A stretch of 63,207 nucleotides of DNA, the filler included, from Dugesia japonica (lineage: Eukaryota): NCBI GenBank assembly GCA_001938525.1. It is 6 parts of 6 records of this genome, joined end to end, with 100 filler letters (N's around TTAATTAATTAA, not from the genome) between each part and the next. Parts side by side here need not be neighbours in the genome. Positions count along the whole stretch, not along the records: positions 10,817 to 21,743 come from MQRL01615993.1; 5 more parts are not named here. One strand, 5' to 3'. How positions within the stretch are numbered: position 1 is the stretch's first letter; each line of letters begins with the position of its first letter. A model generated the notes under the pieces. The model was not told the origin of the DNA. It worked only from the letters and a program-made list of their open reading frames with translations, and did not search any database. Of this stretch, positions 10,817 through 21,743 are shown in pieces. Position numbers and translations under genes: made by a program.

Positions 10817-11719
10817 AACTCAAGTGTTAATTTTTATGGAACCAAATAACAAAATAGAAGATTCTGAGGAAACTACTTACAGAGGACATTTGCATAACTT
10901 ATTTTGAGTGGTGGACAGTGATACATCTTGGCTATGCTGAATTTTGAATAGTAGAAATAGATGTTGTTCAAATATAAATGAGATAAAAGACATTATTGAT
11001 GTGTTTAGGTAATCTTCAAAGGTAATCCTGAAATATAATATTTCAATAATAAAACAAAACCCTTTGACCTTAATTTTAAATTTACAAAGTTAAATTAGGT
11101 ATCATTCTATGTATATATACATTCAGAATAAATATTTGCATATTTTGTAACTAAGTCTTTCGGGGAACAACTTATGATTCATAGCTTCATATTGTTAATC
11201 TCATTTCACATTTAATACTCTTAATTTTAGAGTCTAAACTCTACCAGACAATCAAATAAACACAGAAAACTTTGCCACTCATTGGGTTGCCAGTTAACAT
11301 TGCTCCAATGTACTGCTAATTTTTTAGCAAAAAAAAATTGGCACAGTGGAAAANNNNNNNNNNNNNNNNNNNNNNNNNNNNNNNNNNNNNNNNNNNNNNN
11401 NNNNNNNNNNNNNNNNNNGCACTATCTACCTACTGAAGTAGATTAGAAAACTGTAAATATTTATATATAGAAATTTAAATCAGGTCTAGTAATAATCAAT
11501 ATCGTTTTTAATGTTAAAGATGATCGATTAAATAAAAGATTTTCTTATTAACTAAAATTGTGAATAAAGAAAAAATTTAAGTGTTAAAATACATTTTTGT
11601 TTAAGTTATTATAATACGACCTCTAGATAATGGTGCATGAAATGCATGTTAGACATTATTTACTATATGAATTTCAGTTGGAAAGAAAATCAGTGGATGC
11701 AGCTAAATTTATTTGCTAT

Positions 11720-12430
11720 GCACTTGGTAAAGACGTTAGCAATCGTAAATGCCAAGAAAAAGATATATATGTCCATAATAGATAAATTTAGCAGATACAT
11801 ATGCTTAACAGCCCTAGTTAAACAAGATGAGGAATCAATAAAGAAAACGATTATGGATAAATGGATACTAAAATTCGGTGCTCCAAAAGAGATACATGAA
11901 TATTGTAGAAAGGTCTGCGAATCGAAAGCCTTCAAAGAAATGACAGATTCAATGAATATAACGATTTGCTTTTCAAGTCCCTATCATCATAATAAAAACG
12001 GAATAGTTGAACGTCAATTCAGAATGATCAAAGATTATATCAATGCAACATTAAAAGATAAAAAAATAAAAATTAGGCAGTGTTAATACCAGAAATAGAA
12101 TATACTCTAAATGCAACAAGCCAGAAGACTTTGGGCATATGTCCAGCAGAAGTGATATTCGGTAAGAAGATACATAGAGNACGATGGTTCAATAATGGAG
12201 AAAAGAAGGAAGAATCTGAATAGTTGACACCAACAAACAGTCGTTTTCAAGTTGGAGACGAGGTGCTAATCAAGGCAAAAACCCGATCAAAAGACAAAGA
12301 AAAGACATACATGTCTGTATGAGGTGATAAAACATATTTATGAAAGACGATACCTGCTGAAGAGTTCAGAAGGCAAGATGATTGAAAGAAATGTGGAAAA
12401 AATTAAAAAATGTTTAAAGAGGGGGATGTA
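11720..12430 (+). mobile_element. Ty3/Gypsy integrase fragment with polypurine tract and start of 3' LTR
   Basis: IIDKFSRY...WILKFGAPKEIH...SSPYHHNKNGIVERQFR; PPT AAAGAGGGGGA followed by TGTAAG at 12427. Confidence 0.9.
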
Positions 12431-12913
12431 AGATGATTCATGAATTTCGCATGTCTGAGATTTTTGAATTTTTCTATATAATATTAAAATTGGTTTTTTA
12501 AAACTTTTAAAATATAAAACACGTTTTTTTAAAATGCAAACTATTTGAATAAATTCTTTATATTATATTATGCAAAATTATGAAATTATAAAAATTATTT
12601 TGTGAAATTATGTTTAAAAATAATTAAATATATTTGTAAAAAAATGTTATTTCAAAATTAAAGTCGATATTTTATATAATGTTGAATTATAAAATTATAA
12701 AAATTATTTTATAAAATTAGGTTTAAAAATAATTAAAGATACAGGTAAAATAAATAAAAGTATTTTGGAATTTAAAAAATCAATATTTTTGAAAAATATT
12801 TTAGTAAAATTTCTCAGATTATTTGTTTGAAAATTGTGAATTGTTAATTGTTTTCATTTTAATAAAAGACTTGTAATAATCAATTAAAAATTTTTGGAGA
12901 TTTTGAATTTAAC

Positions 12914-12962
<49 letters not shown>
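12914..12962. repeat. (AAT)n microsatellite
   Basis: Direct inspection. Confidence 0.95.
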
Positions 12963-14587
12963 CAATGATTGTATTTATCATAATTAATTACCATATTTAC
13001 GAAATAAAATGTAAGATAATATTTCTATTATTTTTCACAACTTTAGAGTAAGTATTTATACTTAATTTTACAATTTTTTGTAATATTTTGACAAAGTTAA
13101 AACTCAAAATACTAAAAAAATGGAAAAAATTAAATATCAACTATATAAAATAGATATACAAAATATTCTCATTACATAACTAGTAAAAAAATCCAATTTA
13201 ATCGATTTACATTTAGATATTCAATATATTATCGATCTTTGTTTAAATGTATNTACTATATATGAATAATGATTATTGAAACAAAATATCAAACTAAGTA
13301 ATATTATTAGGCAAACAATTTAAACATTTTTCAGAGTGAGAGTAATACTTTCTTGTTTTATTTATTTATTTTTAATTAATAATTTATAATAGAATGAAAA
13401 ATTTATTCATTATTCTGAACATCTTTAATGGATTCATTGTTTAAATAAAAAAGATTATTTTCAATTGAAATTATTTAAAATAACTTTCCAAAAAACATCA
13501 ACGTAAATTATTTTAATTTTACTTTAAATAATAAATTAAAATCTGCATTCAATTTTTAGAATTTATATTGTACTGAGCAGAAATTATATAATTGGACATA
13601 AGTCATCCATTACGGAAATTTTCAAAAGTCAATAAACATTAATTATACTTATGCTTTTATTAACAATACGATTAGTATGAATTACTTAATTTAGTGTTCT
13701 CGTAAAAAATGAAATATATTAGAAAAATCAAAACAAATAATCATATCTTTATTTCGAGTAATTTTTAATTACCTAAAATAGTAAATAAAAATTTGTTAAA
13801 ATATGGTCTGAAGTAATTTTTTTTAGAAGTATTAAAATGAACTGTTTTTCTGTTTTAATGGATAGATATTTGGATAAAATAATCTTTATTGGAAAACAAA
13901 ATCAATTTAATATAGATTTTTACAATTTTAATTATTGCGAGAATAATTTTTGAACTTAANNNNNNNNNNNNNNNNNNNNNNNNNNNNNGTCGATCAAAAT
14001 GTTGTTTTTTTTATACTTAGTTGTTTTTAATATTGATATAGATTTTGTAATTTATTTTAAGTTAATCTTAATCAATAAAATTTGTTGGATTATTTTATTA
14101 TTGTACCGATAATAATATGATCAATGTACTGAAAATAATGATCGTTGAAATAATAATTCAATAAATTGGTTTTCACAGCGGAATTATATAACGATACCAA
14201 CTATACAGTTCCCGTGACTCACTAAGTACCCAAAAAAAGCTGGCTGCAAAGAAACTCAAAGAATAGAAAAATATCGGAATAAATAAAGGTTAAATCTATA
14301 TTAAATAAGAAATCAAGTAAAAAAGAAAATGAAAATATATTTATTTACGATAAAACAAAGTAAAGATCAAACCATTATAATAAAAACAATATAAAAAGTT
14401 GGTTATACGGGAAAAAAGAAATACAATACAATTCGTTTAATATTACATTTAGTCGATGCAATTTATTTATCTATCGACTTCTATGGAATTTCATGGAATA
14501 TTTAGTTATGTCTATACAATTTCTATAAATTATATGATACTTCTATGTAAAACAAATCTAAACTGTTCTCGTGAGCACTTATCCATC

Positions 14588-14590
<3 letters not shown>

Positions 14591-14627
<37 letters not shown>
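14591..14627. repeat. (TA)n microsatellite
   Basis: Direct inspection. Confidence 0.95.
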
Positions 14628-14634
<7 letters not shown>

Positions 14635-15557
14635 ATTATAATTATCATTACAAAATAATACAATTCTCTATTATTAGAATTCAATTCTTACAATGTCCAT
14701 CAGTCATTGGTTAGTCTTATGATCTTTATCTTATTATTTTCGATATAAAATAAAATTTTTATTTATTATAAATATGTATTTATGCTTGTAACGATTGCTA
14801 GAGATTCTGTTATAACTCCTTAGAGTTTAGATATCTTTAAAATGTTTCTTTTTAATAAATGTACTACTACTGTTTAACGATCAATATTAATAAATCTATG
14901 TAAAAATATTTTTAATAAATTTATTAAATTAAAAGATTCAATTAAAATGTTGTTTCTTTTATATTTTTTATAATTTTTTAGTTGTGGTTAATATTTCAAA
15001 TTTTCGACTTTATAGTCGAACTTAAAACAATATTTTGATCGAATCTTGTAATTTAATGGAATTTCAAATGCAATCAATGTTTAAGTCAAACAATTATTCT
15101 CTCAATAATTGTAATTGTAAAACGTTTAGTAAATTTAATCTAAATATTAATAAAAAAAAACTGAGAACTTTGAATTAATGAAAAGCATTAAATATAAATT
15201 TTTAAATTTATAATACTAAGTTATACTTCTAGTTTTGTTATGTAAATTTCTTATTGAAATAATTCACCGATTATTAATAATTAACAATAAGAGTTTATTT
15301 AATGAAACAATACTAAAATAACTTTTTATAGATACATATATTTACCTTAACATATGAAGCTATTCAATTAAAACTGTGTTTATCTTATTTATCAAGCAAA
15401 AATATATCATAAAATCTATTTTATCCAGCCCAATTGTTTCTAAATGATCTTTTATAATTAATAAGCAATTTGAAATATTATAATAATATTTCAATATATA
15501 TAAGTAGTGGGAAAAAGACGAATATAATTCAAGGGGGTATGCTAGCCTAACATGTAA

Positions 15558-15800
15558 AAATTTGACACTTTACATTTTTTATGAAAAAATTTTACATTAA
15601 AAAGTGTTTTCCTAAAGACATTATTTTTTTATTTTTAATGTCACAAATATCAAATTTTCACAATGAAAAAGTTTTCTTCAAAAACTTTGTCATCAAAGAA
15701 AATTTGATATGTGACATTAAAATTAAAAAATAATATCAAACAAAACACTTTATTTAAAGTAACAAAAATTTTTTCATAAAAAATCTAAAGTGTCAAAAAT
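15558..15800. repeat. ~240-bp imperfect palindrome near the element end
   Basis: Arm pairs tttgacactttacattttttatgaaaaa / ttttcataaaaaatctaaagtgtcaaa and ttaatgtcacaaatatcaaattttc / gaaaatttgatatgtgacattaa; centre aaagtttt-cttca-aaaacttt. Confidence 0.85.
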
Positions 15801-15969
15801 GCGCGAGTGAAATCTAAACATGTCAAATTAAAAATATCCTTTTCGCGCAAAAAAAATGTGCGAGACTTTTAAGAGGAAACATGAAAGAGGAATAATATAA
15901 AATGTAAAATGTTAAATGGAAAATCTAACTCCTTTTAGTGGGTGTATGATTAAATTATTTCTTTAGAAA

Positions 15970-16530
15970 ATGAGTGCTATAATAAGATGTGAAAACTGTG
16001 GAAAGGTGTTTAAGAATTTAGGAGGTAAAATGGGACATGCAAGATCTCGAACTTGTAATAGAAATGAAATAGTATTTCAATGTGAAAAATGTCGTTGAAC
16101 ATTTAGAACAGAAAATGGTTTACGAGAACATTTAAATTCATCAGTTTGTGGAAATTCAATTAATGTACCATTAAAATGTGAGATTTGTAATAAAACATTT
16201 ACAAGACAAAATCTNNNNNNNNNNNNNNNNNNNNNNNNNNNNNNNNNNNNNNNNNNNNNNNNNNTTTTATTTAGAGAATTACCACAAGAAGAAGCAATTG
16301 ATTATAATCCAGAAATTAGAGATATTTTTAGAATGTACAAAGATTATGAAATTGAATATTTTAAAGAAAGTAAAGTGGTAATGAGAAAAAATGTGGAACC
16401 AATTATTAGAGATATTAAAACATTTCAAAATCAAGTTAAAGAAATTATTACAAAGTATTTTAGATATGGAAAAAAGATTTTTATAAGTATGCCAGTAAAA
16501 TGTAGATATACAAAAGATATAAAAAAATTC
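15970..16530 (+). pseudogene. Truncated ORF with tandem zinc fingers, probably a pPolB N-terminus
   Basis: MSAIIRCENCGKVFKNLGGKMGH...FQCEKCR*TFRTENGLREHL...LKCEICNKTFTRQN. Polinton pPolBs often begin with C2H2-type fingers. Confidence 0.6.
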
Positions 16531-17228
16531 AATTCAATTCTATCAATATATATTTTATGTTGTCTTGATGTTACTCTTTCAATTTCTTCAGTTAATTTAA
16601 AAATTATAGGTTTAAATTTTTCTATATCTAATTTAATTTTATCAATATAAGCCATATGATTGTCAAAAGTTTTCTTATTTAAATCTTTATGTAAAATCTT
16701 AATTTTAGTGTATAATATTTCAATTTCTTTTTTAATTTTTTTAGGTAAATCATCATCAACTAATCTTTTAAAATTAATTAATAAATCACTTCTTTTAAAT
16801 GGAAAACCTTCTAACCTAATTGTTTTAATCTCAGAATCTATTTTATCAAATGTTTCTTGATTACACTTCTTTGTTAAATTTTTAATTTTCTCATTTATAC
16901 TTTTAACATTAACATTCAAATCTTATAATTCATCAGCCTTAGATTGTAAATAAAGTTTGTTAGATGTAAAATTATCAATCTTTAATATTTTAATAAAAAT
17001 TAATTCATGTTTTTCTATTTTATTTTCTAATTGTTTAATGTATTGTAAATTAACTGCATCATGTAAATCTTTAGGCTCTTCTGTTATTTTTAAACATGTT
17101 ATTGTGTCACCTGTTTCATCTACAAATTTATTTTCATTTGTTGCATCTGACATTCTAATTTTAGCATCAACATGTTTTAATACTTGTGAATTATTTACAT
17201 TGAATATACTTTCTCCAAACTTATTCAT
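16431..17228 (-). pseudogene. Fibre-like/coiled-coil Maverick protein (two in-frame ORFs split by one TAA)
   Basis: MNKFG start; FVDETGDTIT...EPKDLHDAVNLQY resembles a tail-fibre-type motif; ORFs 16923-17228 and 16431-16919 share a frame. Confidence 0.5.
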
Positions 17229-17674
17229 TGTCCTTTTATTAATCTTAAATTATCATATAAAATTTTCATCTCTGAAATTATTTCATCAAATTTGACATGA
17301 GACATTTTATATAAATAATAAATACACAAGATACCACAAATTTTAGTATCAAAATGTTGAACTTGAATTTTATTTTATTTCGTGGTGACTCTTGCGAGTC
17401 TTTCTAAAGATTTTAAACCAAAAGAGTCAAAATAGACTGCTTTGGTTTGTGCTTTGCCGTAATAACCGTTGGTGTAACAAACCCAATGTGTTCCTTTTTG
17501 ATTTGTATTTTGATAATTAAAAATATAATTTTTTCTGGAACCCTGAAAGATTCCTGGTATTTCATTTTTCAAATAAATTTCTAAATCCATTTGTAAAAAG
17601 TCTGCAATTGAATATAAATCAAAATTTGTTGTTGTGTTAATTCCAAATGTTTTCAAGAAATCAATCAATGACAT
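17225..17674 (-). pseudogene. Adenain-like (adenovirus-type) cysteine protease
   Basis: GTHWVCY...YFDSFG; after one in-frame TAA, QVQHFDTKICGILC supplies the oxyanion Gln and catalytic Cys. Confidence 0.9.
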
Positions 17675-17709
17675 TTTCTTAAATCTAAAAAATGGGTCAC
17701 GCCGTGGCT

Positions 17710-18460
17710 CTATAATTGATATTTTCTTAAATGAACTAAAATAGAAATCATCTCTTGGTTAAAATCAATTCTGTTAAAATTTTCATCCACAATGTTAAAT
17801 TTTATAATATCAATATATTTTGTATTAATTTTAGAATAAATTGTTACAGATGGTCTTTCAAGAATTTTAAATCCAAAAAGAACTGTGTTAATTGGAAATG
17901 AATACAATAAATTTATTTGTTTGGTATTTCCTTCTGGAGATTTTACATAATTACCTTTAACAATATTACAAGTTATATTTATCATGTTAATAAGTGTAAT
18001 GTAAAATTCTTTTTCTGAATAATTTTTTCCTGTTTGATAAGGTTTTACTTCAAAACCTAACATTTTATGAAAAAAAGATTTATCATCAAAAGTTAAAATG
18101 TTTTCTGTTTTCATATTACATTTTGTGGTTGAAGTGTCGGGCAAAACTTCTATTCCATATTTTTCTAATTTATTTGATATTTATTTTATTTCATATGCAC
18201 CAGGTTCAATTTTATTTTCTCCATGTTCAATTTTAATTTTCTTTGCAACAGGTTCAATTTTATTTGCAACAGGTACAATTTTATTTGCAACAGGTACATG
18301 TTAAATTTATTATTTAAATCTGTTATGTTAAAAATAATATTGTAACATGTAAAACAAATTAATCCAAGTTCATACTCTAAATCTAATTCTATAGGAAATT
18401 TTAAATCTAATTTTAAATCCTGTTCTTTTCCAACTACTAAGAATTGATGTGATATTCTTT
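17710..18460 (-). pseudogene. Polinton minor capsid (penton-like) protein
   Basis: N-terminus LKFPIELDLEYELGLICFTCYNIIFNI..NNKF..IEPGAYEI; C-terminus ITCNIVKGNY..LLYSFP..IKFNIVDENFNRIDFNQEMISILVHLR. Confidence 0.8.
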
Positions 18461-18549
18461 TCTTAAGAGAAATATTTAGATTTATATTTTTTATAAATCT
18501 TATCAGATATTAAACCCTTCACCTTTAATTTTTTACATATTGTTTTAAT

Positions 18550-19473
18550 TTATTCATGTAAATTATGATGTCCTGATTTTGCTGCTGAAATTAATAATGT
18601 TAACTTTTCAAATAAACCTATTATTCCTTTTCCTTCAGCTTTGTTTTTTGGTCTACCTATTTTAGATTTTAATATTTCTCTTAAAAATTTACAGTATTCA
18701 TCATCAATAGTTTCTTTTACCATTTTTAAATAAATCTCAATAAAATATTTTATTGTTTTATTTTTCTTTATATTCCCTTTATTTCCTAAAATTATATGCA
18801 CTAAAATAACATTATACGCATGAGTTTCTTCACCGATAACAAAATATTTAAGATTTCCCCTTTTATATAAAAATAACTCTTCATCATTTCCTGAAAATTT
18901 TATTGTTATGAATTTTTTATCAGGTTCTCCTTTAGTAGCAACATTTGTAAAAAATATTTTTGGTGTTGNNNNNNNNNNNNNNNNNNNNNNNNNNNNNNNN
19001 NNNNNNNNNNNNNNNNNNTCAGGTTCTCCTTTAGTAGCAACATTTGTAAAAAATATTTTTGGTGTTGTTAATTCTGTTAATGCATTTTCATTTATTTTTA
19101 AATCATCCTTGAAAGAAATTGGTTGTATTTCATCTTTCCTTAATATTTCAATTTTTTTATCTTCATCTTTAATAGGTTCATCTTTAATTTTTTCAATTTC
19201 CTTTTGAATAGGATCATTAAAAACGGTTGGAATATTTGAAGTAAATGTTGGTTTAATTTGATTTTGATTTTGGCTTCGGGTTAATGCCGAAATTAATGGT
19301 TGTTGTAAAATTGATAATTCACTTTGTAAGTTTCTTGTTTGAATATTATTTTTACAGAAAAAATTATTATATTCTTCTTGAGCCGCAATTTGTTTTCTTA
19401 TTTCTATAATTCTTTTTTCAACTTGTTTCGTATTCATCTTCTTCTTCTTCTTCAGTATCTTCTTCTTCTTCAC
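18550..19473 (-). CDS. Maverick conserved core-like protein
   Basis: C-terminal GKGIIGLFEKLTLLISAAKSGHHNLHE matches the recurrent Maverick (R/K)LxLLxxxxxAG(N/H) motif; contains an assembly gap with duplicated flanks. Confidence 0.55.
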   Translation of the reverse strand: MKKKKILKKKKKMNTKQVEKRIIEIRKQIAAQEEYNNFFCKNNIQTRNLQSELSILQQPLISALTRSQNQNQIKPTFTSNIPTVFNDPIQKEIEKIKDEPIKDEDKKIEILRKDEIQPISFKDDLKINENALTELTTPKIFFTNVATKGEPXXXXXXXXXXXXXXXXXXTPKIFFTNVATKGEPDKKFITIKFSGNDEELFLYKRGNLKYFVIGEETHAYNVILVHIILGNKGNIKKNKTIKYFIEIYLKMVKETIDDEYCKFLREILKSKIGRPKNKAEGKGIIGLFEKLTLLISAAKSGHHNLHE

Positions 19474-19499
19474 TATTTTCTATATAATTATTTTGACTT

Positions 19500-19945
19500 A
19501 CTCCTTTCCAAGGGTTTAAATATAAACCTTTTCCTTTGTGAACTACACGAATTCCTTCTTTAAATTTTTTTGTTACACCTTTTAATTTAGGATTAATATT
19601 TTTTAAATATTTATGAATTGCAGAACCTTGCCATGGATTTAAATATAAAACTTCTCCTTTGTTTTCAAGTTATTCGGTTTCTTTTTGTGTTTTAATTGCT
19701 TCTCTAGAACTTGCCACGGTTGATGCAACTCCAGATGCAATGCTTGCAGCTCCAGATAATGCTCCAATAATTTCAGGAATTGCAGCAAGAAATGCAAATC
19801 CTCCCTCTTTTGGTTGCTTTTTAATTTCATCTTTTACTTTTTTACTAATATAATAATTTTTACCATCAATCTTTACAGATTTACATTTCTTTGAATTTAT
19901 TATCTTTTCTAATTCTTCTTCTGTTGGATTCGTTGCACTCGTCAT
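19500..19945 (-). pseudogene. pX/Mu-like adenain substrate with amphipathic helix
   Basis: EGGFAFLAAIPEIIGALSGAASIASGVASTV resembles adenovirus pX (GGFLPALIPIIAAAIGA); continues past a stop into GEVLYLNPW. Confidence 0.7.
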
Positions 19946-19948
19946 TTT

Positions 19949-21743
19949 CTATATTAAAAATATACATGTTAATGTTTTATTTATTAAGTGCAATCTTAAA
20001 TGCCAAATTTGACAATTTTCACATTCAAACTTATTTCCATGTGGCCAGGTTTTTGCAGCATTATCTTCAATAATTCTTTTATCATCATATCCCATTAATG
20101 CAATCTTTTTTTGTTTTACAATTTCAATTTCGTGTAAGTTGGATGTTAAAGAATAATTTGTTCCATAAATTATTTTACTAGGATTTTTTAAAACTTCATC
20201 AAAATCTTTCATTAATAATTTATTATTTCTTTTAACACCTTTATTTCTTAAATCAAATATTGTTTGATTTCTGTCAATATTACCCAGAGGGACCCATGAA
20301 TATCCATAAGAATTTGCTTTTATAAAATCTCCTTGAATTATTTCAGATTCAGGAATTTCATCTTTCATCTGAAATGATTCATTTCCTAGTAAGCTTTCTA
20401 ATTTTATTAAATTATCTCTACCTTTTATCTCTATAAAGATACAATCGGTATTTTTTATAATTAATGGAAATTCACAATTAAATGATCCATCTTCGGTTTC
20501 AATATCATAAACATCTTCAATGCCTTTTCTTAAGAATCTAACTGTTTGCACATTAGTTGAAATTTCTGATTTTGTTTGCATTGCACTAAAACAATTTGGT
20601 TTATCTTTTCTTTCTGAAACAACTAAATTAATTCCTAAAGATGTTGTTAAATAATACAACTGTGTAAAAAATTCTTTTCCTTTTTGTGTAAAACCAATTG
20701 TTTTATAACTATTTTTTCCATTGAAACTTTTAGTTCCATCTGCTGCATAAAATCATGTAAAGAATCAACATCTAACATCAAATGATGCATTTAAAATATA
20801 TTCAGGAATTTATTTAGTTCTTTCAAATTCATTATAATAATTTTTAGAATAATACTTTGCATGTTTTATAGGATTTTGTAAATGAAGTTTATAAACATGC
20901 GATGATTTCATTGTATCGTATATCATTGTTTCTTTATTATAAACTTCTTTATGAAAGCTTTTTATTTTATTTAATAAATATAAATCTTGATTATTAAATG
21001 TACAACAATATCTTACTCCTGATTTATAATTATAAATTCCTGCTGATCCATTTCCAAGAAAGAAACCATCTATAAAAGCCGCCTTTAATTTTAAATCATT
21101 AGGTTCATTCTCATAAATATCAGATAAAATTTTATAAACATTTATTTCATTATTTGCTTCAAATAATTTATTGTGAAGTAATTTCGTTTCATTTGTTAAA
21201 TCTGTTGGTTTTGATTTGTTCACCTTTATCATTTAATAATGAATGATCTTGTGTTACATCTACAATTCCCATTTTAGTTCTTACTCTNTAAATCTTTTTA
21301 TTTGTNGTNTGNTTAATTACTTTATTTAATTTNACCCANTTACTTTTNGTCCATATTTCATAATTCTCTGGATAAGAATAATATTTTCCATCAAAGTTTT
21401 TTGTATAAGATTGATCTATTTCTGAAATCTTTTTTATTTAAACTTTATTATTTTTTCGTAGTATTATTGGAGTGTCAGATGTTACACTATCTGAATAATG
21501 AATTTTATAATTATTTTATCCAATTAAAGGTTGCATTTGTTCATATATAAAATTATACATTACTTGTTTTGCATGTTCAAGTATTGTGAATCTTATATAA
21601 GGAAATTTATTATATTTTAATTTTCCTTTTACCATATGCATTGCTGCAACATTGGCTTCGTTATTATCGTTTGTTGTGAAGATTTTACTTGATTTAAAAT
21701 TTATTTTAGATGCGAACTTTTGATAATCTCTGTCATTATCTAC
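19949..21743 (-). pseudogene. Polinton protein-primed PolB C-terminal half interrupted by an intein
   Basis: N-extein ..AAMHMVKGKLKYNKFPYIRFTILEHAK..KIHYSD; C-extein TDCIFIEIKG...KKIALMGYDDKRIIEDNAAKTWPHG. Highly similar to the pPolB at 8350-9100. Confidence 0.93.
20450..21488 (-). mobile_element. Intein with LAGLIDADG homing endonuclease (~346 aa) in PolB motif C
   Basis: Block A SVTSDTPIILR, block B GIVDVTQDHSLL, block C DGFFLGNGS, block E FYAADG, block F VYDIETEDGSF, block G IIKN|T. This copy has one +1 frameshift near 21210 and four stops. Confidence 0.93.

What the first reader, a model, noticed from the sequence alone, without database searches (positions are those of the whole stretch)
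20450..21488. Giant-virus-type homing-endonuclease intein inside the protein-primed PolB of an animal Polinton/Maverick
Seen: the catalytic motif is split as ...KIHYSD | SVTSDTPIILR ... GIVDVTQDHSLL ... DGFFLGNGS ... IPEYILNA ... FYAADG ... VYDIETEDGSFNCEFPLIIKN | TDCIFIEI. All intein blocks are present, with Ser1, a terminal Lys-Asn and a Thr+1 nucleophile, over about 346 codons. Established: YxD|TD (the pol-c site) is the insertion site of archaeal and Mimivirus PolB inteins. From recall, the Mimivirus intein also starts SVTGDTP, contains DVTEDHSLL, NNQDL, DTMKSS.VYKL and YAADG, and ends IVKN, all mirrored here. Those known hosts are RNA-primed polymerases, and true inteins are generally considered absent from animal nuclear genomes. 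Inference: the intein moved between a large DNA virus and a Polinton-class virus during co-infection and entered an animal genome with the element. I know of no description of this, but could not search.
Basis: partly seen in the sequence, partly recalled or inferred. Interest (0 to 1): 0.96.

Follow-up and report, generated by a model that had tools for sequence, protein, structure and literature searches.

The report
Dead giant-virus-type intein in Polinton polymerase
A broken copy of a self-splicing, self-copying protein insert (an intein) of the kind known from giant-virus DNA polymerases sits exactly inside the catalytic motif of the protein-primed DNA polymerase of a Polinton-like integrated virus, so this genetic parasite has crossed between two very different virus groups.

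Summary
On the minus strand, 20450-21488 (1039 nt) is a full-length intein with a LAGLIDADG homing endonuclease. It starts with Ser after ..HYSD and ends Lys-Asn before Thr-Asp. It sits between the D and T of polymerase motif C.

- **Intein family.** Searched apart, every stop-free stretch matches, in the same order, inteins at the same site (YGD|SVT..TP ... KN|TDS) in dozens of PF00136-type PolBs, one in a giant-virus MAG. A modelled relative matches solved inteins and DNA polymerases of phycodna-, pandora-, mega-, marseille- and pithoviruses.
- **Host gene.** The exteins are protein-primed PolB. A profile built from PF03175-type Polinton polymerases hits both flanks (E 3e-15 and 3e-17).
- **Other copies.** At least six other public sequences carry the intein in non-PF00136 polymerases, four of them confirmed pPolB. 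Intein-less relatives exist.
- **State.** This copy is dead: four in-frame stops and one frameshift in the intein, one stop in the N-extein.

An animal host and transfer by co-infection could not be tested. I found no published description, but Kapitonov & Jurka 2006 could not be read.

The finding is a new host context for a known intein family, of moderate to high interest.

The parts
19949..21743 (-). [quoted passage not shown] Broken: 5 in-frame stops (3 TAA, 2 TGA) and 1 frameshift in all.
   Evidence: Translations. Counts. A pPolB profile built from P0067 and 119 relatives (many carrying PF03175) hits the N-extein at E 3e-15 and the C-extein at E 3e-17.
21489..21743 (-). N-extein fragment, running from after motif B up to the Y-x-D of motif C. 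It contains 1 in-frame stop.
   Evidence: It matches profile states 224-289 of the pPolB profile. The motif TDTDS lies at states 300-304. It is 43% identical to P0067 over 47 residues.
20450..21488 (-). Intein with LAGLIDADG homing endonuclease, 1039 nt. Ser is the first residue, Lys-Asn are the last two, and Thr follows as +1. Broken: 4 in-frame stops, 1 frameshift and 7 N.
   Evidence: TIGR01445 intein_Nterm scores E 0.0068. LAGLIDADG_3 scores E 0.075 and 0.0013.
21234..21488 (-). N-terminal splicing (Hint) part of the intein, blocks A to B. Bounds are set by motifs.
   Evidence: Ser1-x-x-x-D-T-P lies at the start and T-x-x-H in block B. Profile states 1-14 and 45-105 are covered.
20513..21233 (-). 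Homing-endonuclease part with two LAGLIDADG-type motifs. Bounds are set by motifs and are approximate.
   Evidence: Pfam LAGLIDADG_3 hits twice below threshold. There is a weak sequence match to I-PanMI. It is 57% identical to the L002 relative over 138 residues. Relatives score above the Pfam threshold. The model of a relative matches I-DmoI.
20450..20512 (-). C-terminal splicing part of the intein (blocks F and G), ending Lys-Asn.
   Evidence: Profile states up to 358 end on the Asn. The junction ..IVKN|TDS is shared with the relatives.
19949..20449 (-). C-extein: T-D of motif C through the thumb region to the stop codon (166 codons plus stop). The reading frame is uninterrupted.
   Evidence: It aligns with intein-less pPolB C-termini P0041, P0049, P0060, P0067, P0068 and P0070. 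The profile hit covers states 348-454. It is 44% identical to P0007.
17225..17674 (-). Possible adenain/Ulp1-type cysteine protease gene of the element. It contains 1 in-frame stop.
   Evidence: The only evidence is the order of His, Asp, Gln and Cys motifs read by eye in the translation. There is no Pfam or PDB sequence hit. Unconfirmed.
11637..12086 (+). Fragment of a retroviral-type (rve) integrase core, probably the element's integrase.
   Evidence: Pfam rve scores E 1.2e-06 at 29.2 bits, below the 32.6 cut-off.
16431..19945 (-). Run of closely packed minus-strand ORFs downstream of the polymerase (91, 307, 144, 101 and 162 aa, plus the protease-like gene). Functions are unknown, but the layout is compact and virus-like.
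   Evidence: ORF lists. No family hits. A homologue search with the 144-aa ORF found nothing.

Best explanation
The region is the decayed remnant of a class-1 intein carrying a LAGLIDADG homing endonuclease. [quoted passage not shown] The following steps are inferred from what is established for inteins of this type. In an intact ancestor the insert was translated as part of the polymerase. Ser1 started an N-O acyl shift, Thr+1 took over the N-extein, and the terminal Asn cyclised to release the intein. The ligated exteins restored Y-x-D-T-D and so gave an active polymerase. The endonuclease cut intein-less polymerase alleles at the DNA encoding that motif, and repair copied the intein in. Multi-copy Polintons and co-replicating viruses offer many such targets. 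The intein belongs to the family that lives at the same motif of RNA-primed PolBs of giant viruses, so it has crossed between two polymerase families that share little beyond the motif. It then spread among divergent polymerases outside the PF00136 type, several of them confirmed pPolB. The window's copy no longer works: both the intein and its host gene carry stops, and the intein also carries a frameshift.
For: Shown:
- The boundaries, nucleophiles and blocks are present.
- An intein-family profile covers the insert from its first to its last residue.
- TIGR01445 and LAGLIDADG_3 give hits in the right order, below threshold.
- 76 library hits include more than 30 PF00136/PF03104 PolBs split by Intein_splicing plus LAGLIDADG domains at YGD|S...N|TDS.
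- One intact example lies in a giant-virus MAG.
- An AF2 model of relative P0011 (pLDDT 82.6) matches solved inteins (TliVMA, PhoVMA, PI-TkoII, PI-PfuI, PI-SceI), I-DmoI, and DNA polymerases of phycodna-, pandora-, mega-, marseille-, pitho- and Heterosigma viruses.
- The exteins match a pPolB profile.
- Intein-less relatives have an uninterrupted D-T-D-S.
- The same intein at the same site sits in the pPolB of L003, and also in P0002, P0006 and P0029.
- Window versus L002: the intein is 71% identical in DNA and 64% in protein, while the C-exteins cannot be aligned.
- The non-PF00136-hosted inteins group together (78% bootstrap).
Against: - No single curated model reaches its threshold on the window itself, because each stretch is short.
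- Splicing and cleavage were never tested for any member hosted outside PF00136.
- All four such copies whose DNA I could read are broken or partial, so an active version has not been seen.
- The penultimate residue is Lys, not the usual His, although Lys is the commonest residue at that place in this family.
- The first endonuclease motif does not keep the acidic residue its relatives have.
- The single-group result has weak support on the C-terminal part (29-38%).
- The Polinton assignment rests on the polymerase and an integrase fragment. No capsid or ATPase gene was found in the piece.
Confidence: 0.88

Rival explanations
1. The host gene is an RNA-primed PolB from an endogenous giant-virus fragment, not a Polinton pPolB. 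The intein would then be in its usual home.
For: All the closest full-length intein carriers are PF00136/PF03104 polymerases. The piece is as AT-rich as the giant-virus MAG contig L009.
Against: Both exteins hit a profile of PF03175-type polymerases (E 3e-15 and 3e-17) and give no PF00136 hit. The C-extein is only 166 residues, whereas the PF00136 profile alone spans about 230 positions after the motif. An rve integrase fragment lies nearby.
Confidence: 0.03
2. The direction was the reverse, or the intein is old in both hosts. It would then be ancestral in pPolBs and have moved to giant viruses, or both inherited it independently from a third source such as archaea or phages.
For: The trees are unrooted and weakly supported. 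Archaeal pol-c inteins exist at the same site (PMC549080; PI-TkoII is among the fold matches).
Against: PF00136-hosted members are far more numerous and diverse in the library, with more than 45 of the hits against about 10 others. The others form one small nested group. Most pPolB relatives lack the intein.
Confidence: 0.2
3. It is a plain nuclease-domain insertion, like the HNH and VSR domains already described in Polinton pPolB2, and not a protein-splicing element.
For: Nuclease inserts in pPolBs are known (PMC10748475). L003 and P0207 carry such an HNH insert.
Against: Hint blocks A, B, F and G flank the endonuclease. The ends coincide with those of bona fide inteins. The insert sits inside the catalytic motif, where a non-splicing insert would be expected to destroy the enzyme.
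Confidence: 0.02
4. It is an assembly artefact or contaminant: a chimeric join of a giant-virus intein with a Polinton polymerase.
For: The piece has assembly gaps, scattered N, and a 49-nt duplication on both sides of one gap.
Against: The same junctions occur independently in L001, L002 and L003, from three different data sets. Base composition is uniform across the junctions. The junctions fall exactly at codon boundaries of the motif.
Confidence: 0.04
5. The gene is intact under a non-standard genetic code, so the intein could still be active.
For: The DNA is very AT-rich, as in ciliates that reassign TAA/TAG.
Against: The in-frame stops are of two kinds (3 TAA, 2 TGA). All three stop codons end neighbouring ORFs. 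A frameshift remains whatever the code.
Confidence: 0.02

Closest known systems
Pol-c allele inteins of giant-virus (Nucleocytoviricota) family B DNA polymerases, e.g. the 351-residue Mimivirus PolB intein (PMC549080) and those of phycodnaviruses
   Same: The insertion point is the same, between D and T of Y-x-D-T-D. The first residue is Ser, the last is Asn, and Thr is +1. A LAGLIDADG endonuclease is present and the size is similar (about 346 codons against 283-446 in the hits). Each stretch is 35-55% identical to many such inteins.
   Different: The host here is a protein-primed PolB (PF03175 type), not an RNA-primed PF00136 polymerase. The copy is a pseudogene. No hit named Acanthamoeba polyphaga mimivirus came back. 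The nearest named link is at fold level, from a relative's model to Megavirus courdo11 and other giant-virus polymerases.
Archaeal pol-c inteins such as PI-TkoII (PDB 2cw7) and Tsp-GE8 Pol-2
   Same: The same allele site and the same two-domain architecture. 2cw7 is among the best fold matches of the family model.
   Different: Sequence identity is much lower (15% in the fold match). The archaeal motif is Y-x-D-T-D-G and the hosts are cellular replicative polymerases (PMC549080).
HNH and VSR nuclease domains inserted in Polinton pPolB2 of nematodes, oomycetes and molluscs (PMC10748475), read as possible intein invasions in PMC11161782
   Same: A selfish nuclease inside a Polinton polymerase. 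The relatives L003 and P0207 carry that HNH insert as well.
   Different: Those are bare nuclease domains at other positions, without Hint splicing blocks. Here a complete Hint plus LAGLIDADG intein sits in motif C.
Intein-bearing viral-like DNA polymerases on nuclear scaffolds of Klebsormidium, Tetrabaena and Hondaea (PMC10710043)
   Same: An intein reaches a eukaryotic nuclear genome as a passenger of an integrated viral polymerase gene.
   Different: Those hosts are giant-virus-type polymerases in algae and labyrinthulids. No Polinton or protein-primed polymerase is mentioned in that paper.

Membership tests
Intein (class 1, Hint splicing domain) | Nucleophilic first residue (Cys/Ser/Thr) at the N-terminal junction | tested here: met
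   Ser at 21488-21486, aligned to state 1 of the intein profile. Ser is first in 27 of 27 relatives counted.
Intein (class 1, Hint splicing domain) | Block B with T-x-x-H | tested here: met
   Present within GIVDVTQDHSLL. TIGR01445 covers profile positions 16-82 at E 0.0068, below the cut-off.
Intein (class 1, Hint splicing domain) | C-terminal Asn followed by Cys/Ser/Thr as +1 | tested here: met
   Asn at 20452-20450, then Thr. The relatives have the same N|TDS junction.
Intein (class 1, Hint splicing domain) | Penultimate His | tested here: not met
   Lys stands in this place. This is a family trait and not a defect of this copy: Lys in 25 and His in 12 of 40 junctions counted.
Intein (class 1, Hint splicing domain) | In-frame insertion in a conserved host motif that is continuous in intein-less relatives | tested here: met
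   Relatives P0041, P0060, P0067 and P0070 read ..D-T-D-S.. without interruption. L004 covers profile states 190-307 in one stretch. The flanks were compared apart and never joined.
Intein (class 1, Hint splicing domain) | Open reading frame continuous with the host protein, so able to be made and to splice | tested here: not met
   4 in-frame stops and 1 frameshift in the intein, and 1 stop in the N-extein. No alternative genetic code rescues it.
Intein (class 1, Hint splicing domain) | Protein splicing activity | not testable with these tools
   No experimental data exist for any member of the non-PF00136-hosted group.
LAGLIDADG homing endonuclease (two-motif, intein-borne) | Two dodecapeptide motifs in one chain | tested here: met
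   Two motifs lie at 21070-21044 and 20752-20735. LAGLIDADG_3 scores E 0.075 and 0.0013 on the window. Relatives score above threshold. The family model matches I-DmoI at TM 0.65-0.73 by target.
LAGLIDADG homing endonuclease (two-motif, intein-borne) | Conserved acidic residue in each motif | tested here: not met
   One of the two motifs lacks the acidic residue that L002, L003 and the other relatives keep. This fits with decay.
Pol-c allele PolB inteins of giant viruses | Homology to inteins in Nucleocytoviricota PolB at the Y-G-D|T-D-S site | tested here: met
   An intact example lies in a giant-virus MAG with a PF00136/PF03104 host. Named giant-virus polymerases are matched by the relative's model.
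Pol-c allele PolB inteins of giant viruses | Host is an RNA-primed family B polymerase (PF00136) | tested here: not met
   The exteins match a PF03175-type profile, and Pfam gave no polymerase-family hit on the extein-bearing stretches.
No hit named Acanthamoeba polyphaga mimivirus was returned. The paper gives only the type: 351 residues, Ser/Asn/Thr, pol-c.
Polinton/Maverick | Protein-primed family B polymerase | tested here: met
   A profile built from P0067 and 119 relatives, many carrying PF03175 and named DNA-directed DNA polymerase in animal genomes, hits both exteins. Pfam itself gives no hit on the short fragments.
Polinton/Maverick | Retroviral-type integrase | tested here: inconclusive
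   An rve fragment lies at 11637-12086 on the other strand, at E 1.2e-06 but below the cut-off. Its link to the element is assumed.
Polinton/Maverick | Adenain/Ulp1-type protease, double jelly-roll capsid, penton and packaging ATPase | tested here: inconclusive
   A protease-like motif order was seen by eye only. No hits came from Pfam, PDB sequences or the homologue search. Genes of the relatives L003 and L005 find only the polymerase in the window.
Polinton/Maverick | Terminal inverted repeats and 6-bp target duplication | not testable with these tools
   The piece ends inside the polymerase gene. No long inverted repeat was found within it.
   No host gene lies in the piece. The closest relatives come from unnamed metagenome or draft assemblies.

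The most novel reading that the evidence does not exclude
The piece comes from an animal nuclear genome. It would then be the first bona fide intein sequence, though a relic, found in a metazoan. It arrived as the passenger of a Polinton whose polymerase picked it up from a giant virus. The non-PF00136-hosted intein group would be, or recently was, an active homing element spreading among Polinton copies and Polinton-like viruses.
Probability: 0.2. Interest if true: 0.85.

Novelty: new variant of a known kind. Interest (0 to 1): 0.62.

Why it matters
Inteins usually stay at one site of one protein family, because homing needs a similar target and similar flanks. Here one intein family occupies the same catalytic motif in two polymerase families (RNA-primed PF00136 and protein-primed PF03175) that share little else. 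It is also better conserved than its hosts: 71% DNA identity between two copies whose exteins cannot be aligned. That makes the question of how an intein jumps between distant hosts directly open to study with natural sequences.

The finding also supplies the complete intein that was missing behind the published idea that nuclease inserts in Polinton polymerases are remnants of intein invasions. It links the mobile elements of giant viruses with those of Polinton-like viruses, which are known to replicate in the same cells in protists.

If the source proves to be an animal, the common statement that metazoan genomes hold no inteins (PMC5784728) would need a footnote.

Tried and rejected
- **Curated models on the window's own stretches.** Pfam and NCBIfam gave only sub-threshold hits. 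PDB sequence searches gave nothing useful.
- **Word-indexed protein search.** It found nothing with the 267-residue stretch or the 144-aa neighbour ORF.
- **Exact-protein look-up** of a window ORF found no record.
- **Viral-contig scans** with single window stretches found nothing. A scan with an alignment of relatives found one giant-virus MAG.
- **Alternative genetic code.** Considered because of the AT-richness and rejected.
- **Host organism.** Paper searches for the accessions of the relatives' assemblies found nothing. The cluster look-ups gave no organism names.
- **Capsid, ATPase and protease genes.** Proteins of the relatives L003 and L005 match only the polymerase in the window. My guesses that the 144-aa ORF is a penton and that the L002 neighbour is a packaging ATPase got no support.
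- **Prior description.** Searches for intein with Polinton, Maverick, pPolB, protein-primed and Entamoeba gave only the general remark in PMC11161782. Kapitonov & Jurka 2006 is not held. I have an unverified memory that it mentions an intein in a Polinton polymerase.
- **First tree script** timed out and was replaced.
Full report
**What is in the piece.** The usable piece is 10817-21743. It is very AT-rich (16-33% GC in 500-nt windows) and holds four N runs plus scattered single N. The gene of the finding lies on the minus strand. The piece edge at 21743 cuts off most of the polymerase, so only the stretch from after motif B to the stop codon (19949-19951) can be seen.

**Check of the observation.**
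- The insert begins with Ser (21488-21486) right after ..HYSD. It ends with Lys-Asn (Asn at 20452-20450) right before Thr-Asp-Cys.
- It spans 1039 nt, which is not a multiple of three.
- Reading it needs two frames and passes four in-frame stops. The N-extein fragment has one more stop. The five stops are 3 TAA and 2 TGA.
- Neighbouring ORFs end with TAA, TAG and TGA alike. No alternative code would open the gene, and the frameshift would remain in any case.
- Seven bases in the insert are N.

**Is it an intein?** I searched the stop-free stretches apart and never joined them.
- On the window itself the curated models are weak but fall in the right order: TIGR01445 intein_Nterm at E 0.0068, and LAGLIDADG_3 at E 0.075 and 0.0013.
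- The exhaustive library search used the stretch holding the last 101 intein residues plus the C-extein. It returned 76 hits.
- The long hits (1200-2150 aa) are PF00136/PF03104 family B polymerases split by Intein_splicing, LAGLIDADG_3 and Hom_end domains.
- Each of the window's four intein stretches matches these inteins in the same order, at 35-55% identity.
- Their junctions read Y-G-D|S-V-T-x-x-T-P ... K-N|T-D-S. That gives the same Ser1 and Thr+1 as the window, and the same unusual penultimate Lys.
- A profile of 26 whole natural inteins of this family (358 states) is covered by the window's stretches from state 1, which falls on the Ser, to state 358, which falls on the Asn. E values are 4e-18, 5e-23 and 5e-19 for a nominal million sequences.

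**Is the family 'giant-virus type'?**
- The hosts of the long hits have Y-G-D-T-D-S, the eukaryotic and giant-virus form of the motif. Archaeal polymerases have Y-x-D-T-D-G (PMC549080).
- One host sits on a 35-kb contig of closely packed, intron-less genes with a giant-virus-like mix of domains. Others sit on contigs of 128-386 kb.
- A scan of IMG/VR found an intact copy, V-Y-G-D|S-V-T ... I-V-K-N|T-D-S, in a 1708-residue PF00136/PF03104 polymerase of a giant-virus MAG.
- An AlphaFold model of relative P0011 (pLDDT 82.6, pTM 0.82) matches solved inteins: TliVMA, PhoVMA, PI-TkoII, PI-PfuI and PI-SceI. It also matches the LAGLIDADG enzyme I-DmoI.
- Among viral models it matches DNA polymerases of an unknown phycodnavirus (37% identity), Pandoravirus, Megavirus courdo11, Marseillevirus, Heterosigma akashiwo virus 01, Klosneuvirus and Pithovirus.
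The published description of that intein (351 residues, Ser first, Asn last, Thr +1, pol-c allele; PMC549080) is of the same type.

**What is the host gene?** It is not the same polymerase family.
- The C-extein is only 166 residues. It aligns with short polymerase C-termini that read ..D-T-D-S.. without interruption: P0041, P0049, P0060, P0067, P0068 and P0070.
- P0067's relatives carry PF03175, the organellar and viral (protein-primed) type. Many are annotated as DNA-directed DNA polymerase or uncharacterised LOC proteins in snails, bees, ants, wasps and aphids.
- A profile built from 120 of them hits the window's N-extein (E 3e-15, states 224-289) and C-extein (E 3e-17, states 348-454). Motif T-D-T-D-S lies at states 300-304, between the two.
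- P0049 lies in a 22-kb element with a weak double jelly-roll hit and an rve integrase.
- In the window an rve integrase fragment lies at 11637-12086 on the plus strand. A run of compact minus-strand ORFs follows the polymerase.
- One of these ORFs shows the His, Asp, Gln, Cys order of an adenain-type protease, with one stop, but no tool confirmed it.
- No capsid or ATPase gene was found.
- 'Polinton-like' is therefore well supported for the polymerase and only suggested for the rest.

**The same arrangement elsewhere.**
- L003 is an 86-kb ENA contig. It holds a Polinton-type polymerase whose N-extein ends at profile state 301 (..H-Y-V-D) and whose C-extein resumes after ..R-N|T-D-S. A full intein between them matches all the window's stretches. 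That copy is also interrupted by stops and a frameshift.
- L004, from the same assembly, covers states 190-307 in one stretch, so it is an intein-less allele.
- L003 and the 1231-residue relative P0207 also carry an Endonuclease_7/HNH insert. That insert is the feature described for pPolB2 of terrestrial nematodes and oomycetes (PMC10748475).
- P0002 (L001, from NCBI assembly GCA_044232415.1), P0006 and P0029 join the intein's C-terminal part to a pPolB-type C-extein.
- L002 (ENA) has the closest intein: 71% DNA identity over 806 nt, ending at the intein's C-terminal junction, and 57-64% protein identity. Its 174-residue C-extein cannot be aligned with the window's. It matches neither PF00136 nor my pPolB profile.
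- The intein is thus better conserved than its hosts, as expected for an element that moves between them.

**Trees.** I made neighbour-joining trees for each stretch separately.
- On the middle stretch, window plus L002 has 100% bootstrap, and adding L003 gives 78%. The group is nested among PF00136-hosted inteins.
- On the C-terminal stretch, the non-PF00136-hosted inteins again form one group, but with 29-38% support.
- One entry into pPolBs followed by spread among them is the simplest reading. The direction of transfer and the route remain inferences.
- The DNA on each side of the insertion point, compared apart, keeps the pattern TAT-NNN-GAY before and ACN-GAY after, in the window, L003, a PF00136 host (L008) and, from the paper, Mimivirus. 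That is a short shared target and gives little flank homology.

**Literature.**
- Reviews state that inteins are absent from metazoan genomes and list viral DNA-polymerase inteins only for Phycodnaviridae, Iridoviridae and Mimiviridae (PMC5784728).
- Intein-bearing viral-like polymerases on nuclear scaffolds are reported for three protists or algae, with no mention of Polintons (PMC10710043).
- PMC11161782 notes nuclease inserts in Polinton pPolBs and suggests intein invasions.
- I found no description of a complete intein in a pPolB.
- Kapitonov & Jurka 2006 is not held. I have an unverified memory that it mentions one, and this lowers my novelty estimate.

**Host organism.** I could not name it. 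The closest relatives are unnamed metagenome or draft-assembly sequences. None of the contigs fetched looked human.

- I built no mended, joined or consensus sequence, and I used no consensus line printed by an alignment tool.
- Possible slip 1: the ranges of the stop-free stretches used as queries appear in my tool calls and in my three notes, and their ends lie next to breaks.
- Possible slip 2: searches printed plain three-frame translations, of the window and of L003, in which stops are visible.
- Possible slip 3: while reading alignments I noticed which residues the relatives carry opposite the stops.
- None of this is listed in this report.

Noticed in passing
window 18920-19067: An exact 49-nt duplicate lies on both sides of the N run 18969-19018, inside the 307-aa ORF. 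It looks like an assembly-gap artefact and not biology.
   Followed up: no
window 18184-18311: A tandem repeat with a 21-nt period (about 4 copies) lies between two minus-strand ORFs. It encodes a short repeated peptide in one minus frame.
   Followed up: no
window 12100-16100: About 4 kb at 16-21% GC has no ORF of 60 aa or more. It contains a (TAA)16 run, a (TA)22 run, a 95-nt direct repeat pair (12550/12659) and a 33-nt, 97% inverted repeat (15561-15593 / 15765-15797). It is either decayed element genes or unrelated AT-rich filler between the integrase fragment and the rest.
   Followed up: partly
L003 7294-7929 and protein P0207 residues 477-524: Relatives of this polymerase carry an Endonuclease_7/HNH domain further upstream. 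One polymerase gene (L003) therefore holds two different selfish nuclease inserts, an HNH domain and the LAGLIDADG intein.
   Followed up: partly
L003 and L004 (both from ENA assembly ERZ26859043): An intein-bearing and an intein-less pPolB occur in the same assembly. This is the kind of presence/absence pair that homing would act on. I did not establish whether they belong to the same organism or element family.
   Followed up: partly
L001 1071-1574: Next to the AT-rich polymerase fragment, this short NCBI contig has a GC-rich repeat of about 130 nt. It gives near-identical ORFs on both strands. Its nature is unknown.
   Followed up: no
L002 1343-1687 (minus strand): The gene beside the intein-bearing polymerase looked to me like a packaging ATPase fragment, but Pfam gave no supporting hit.
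   Followed up: partly
L009 (giant-virus MAG contig, 22.5% GC): The intact giant-virus polymerase intein there matches the window's N- and C-terminal splicing stretches but not its middle endonuclease stretch. The endonuclease part may have been exchanged or have diverged separately from the splicing part.
   Followed up: no
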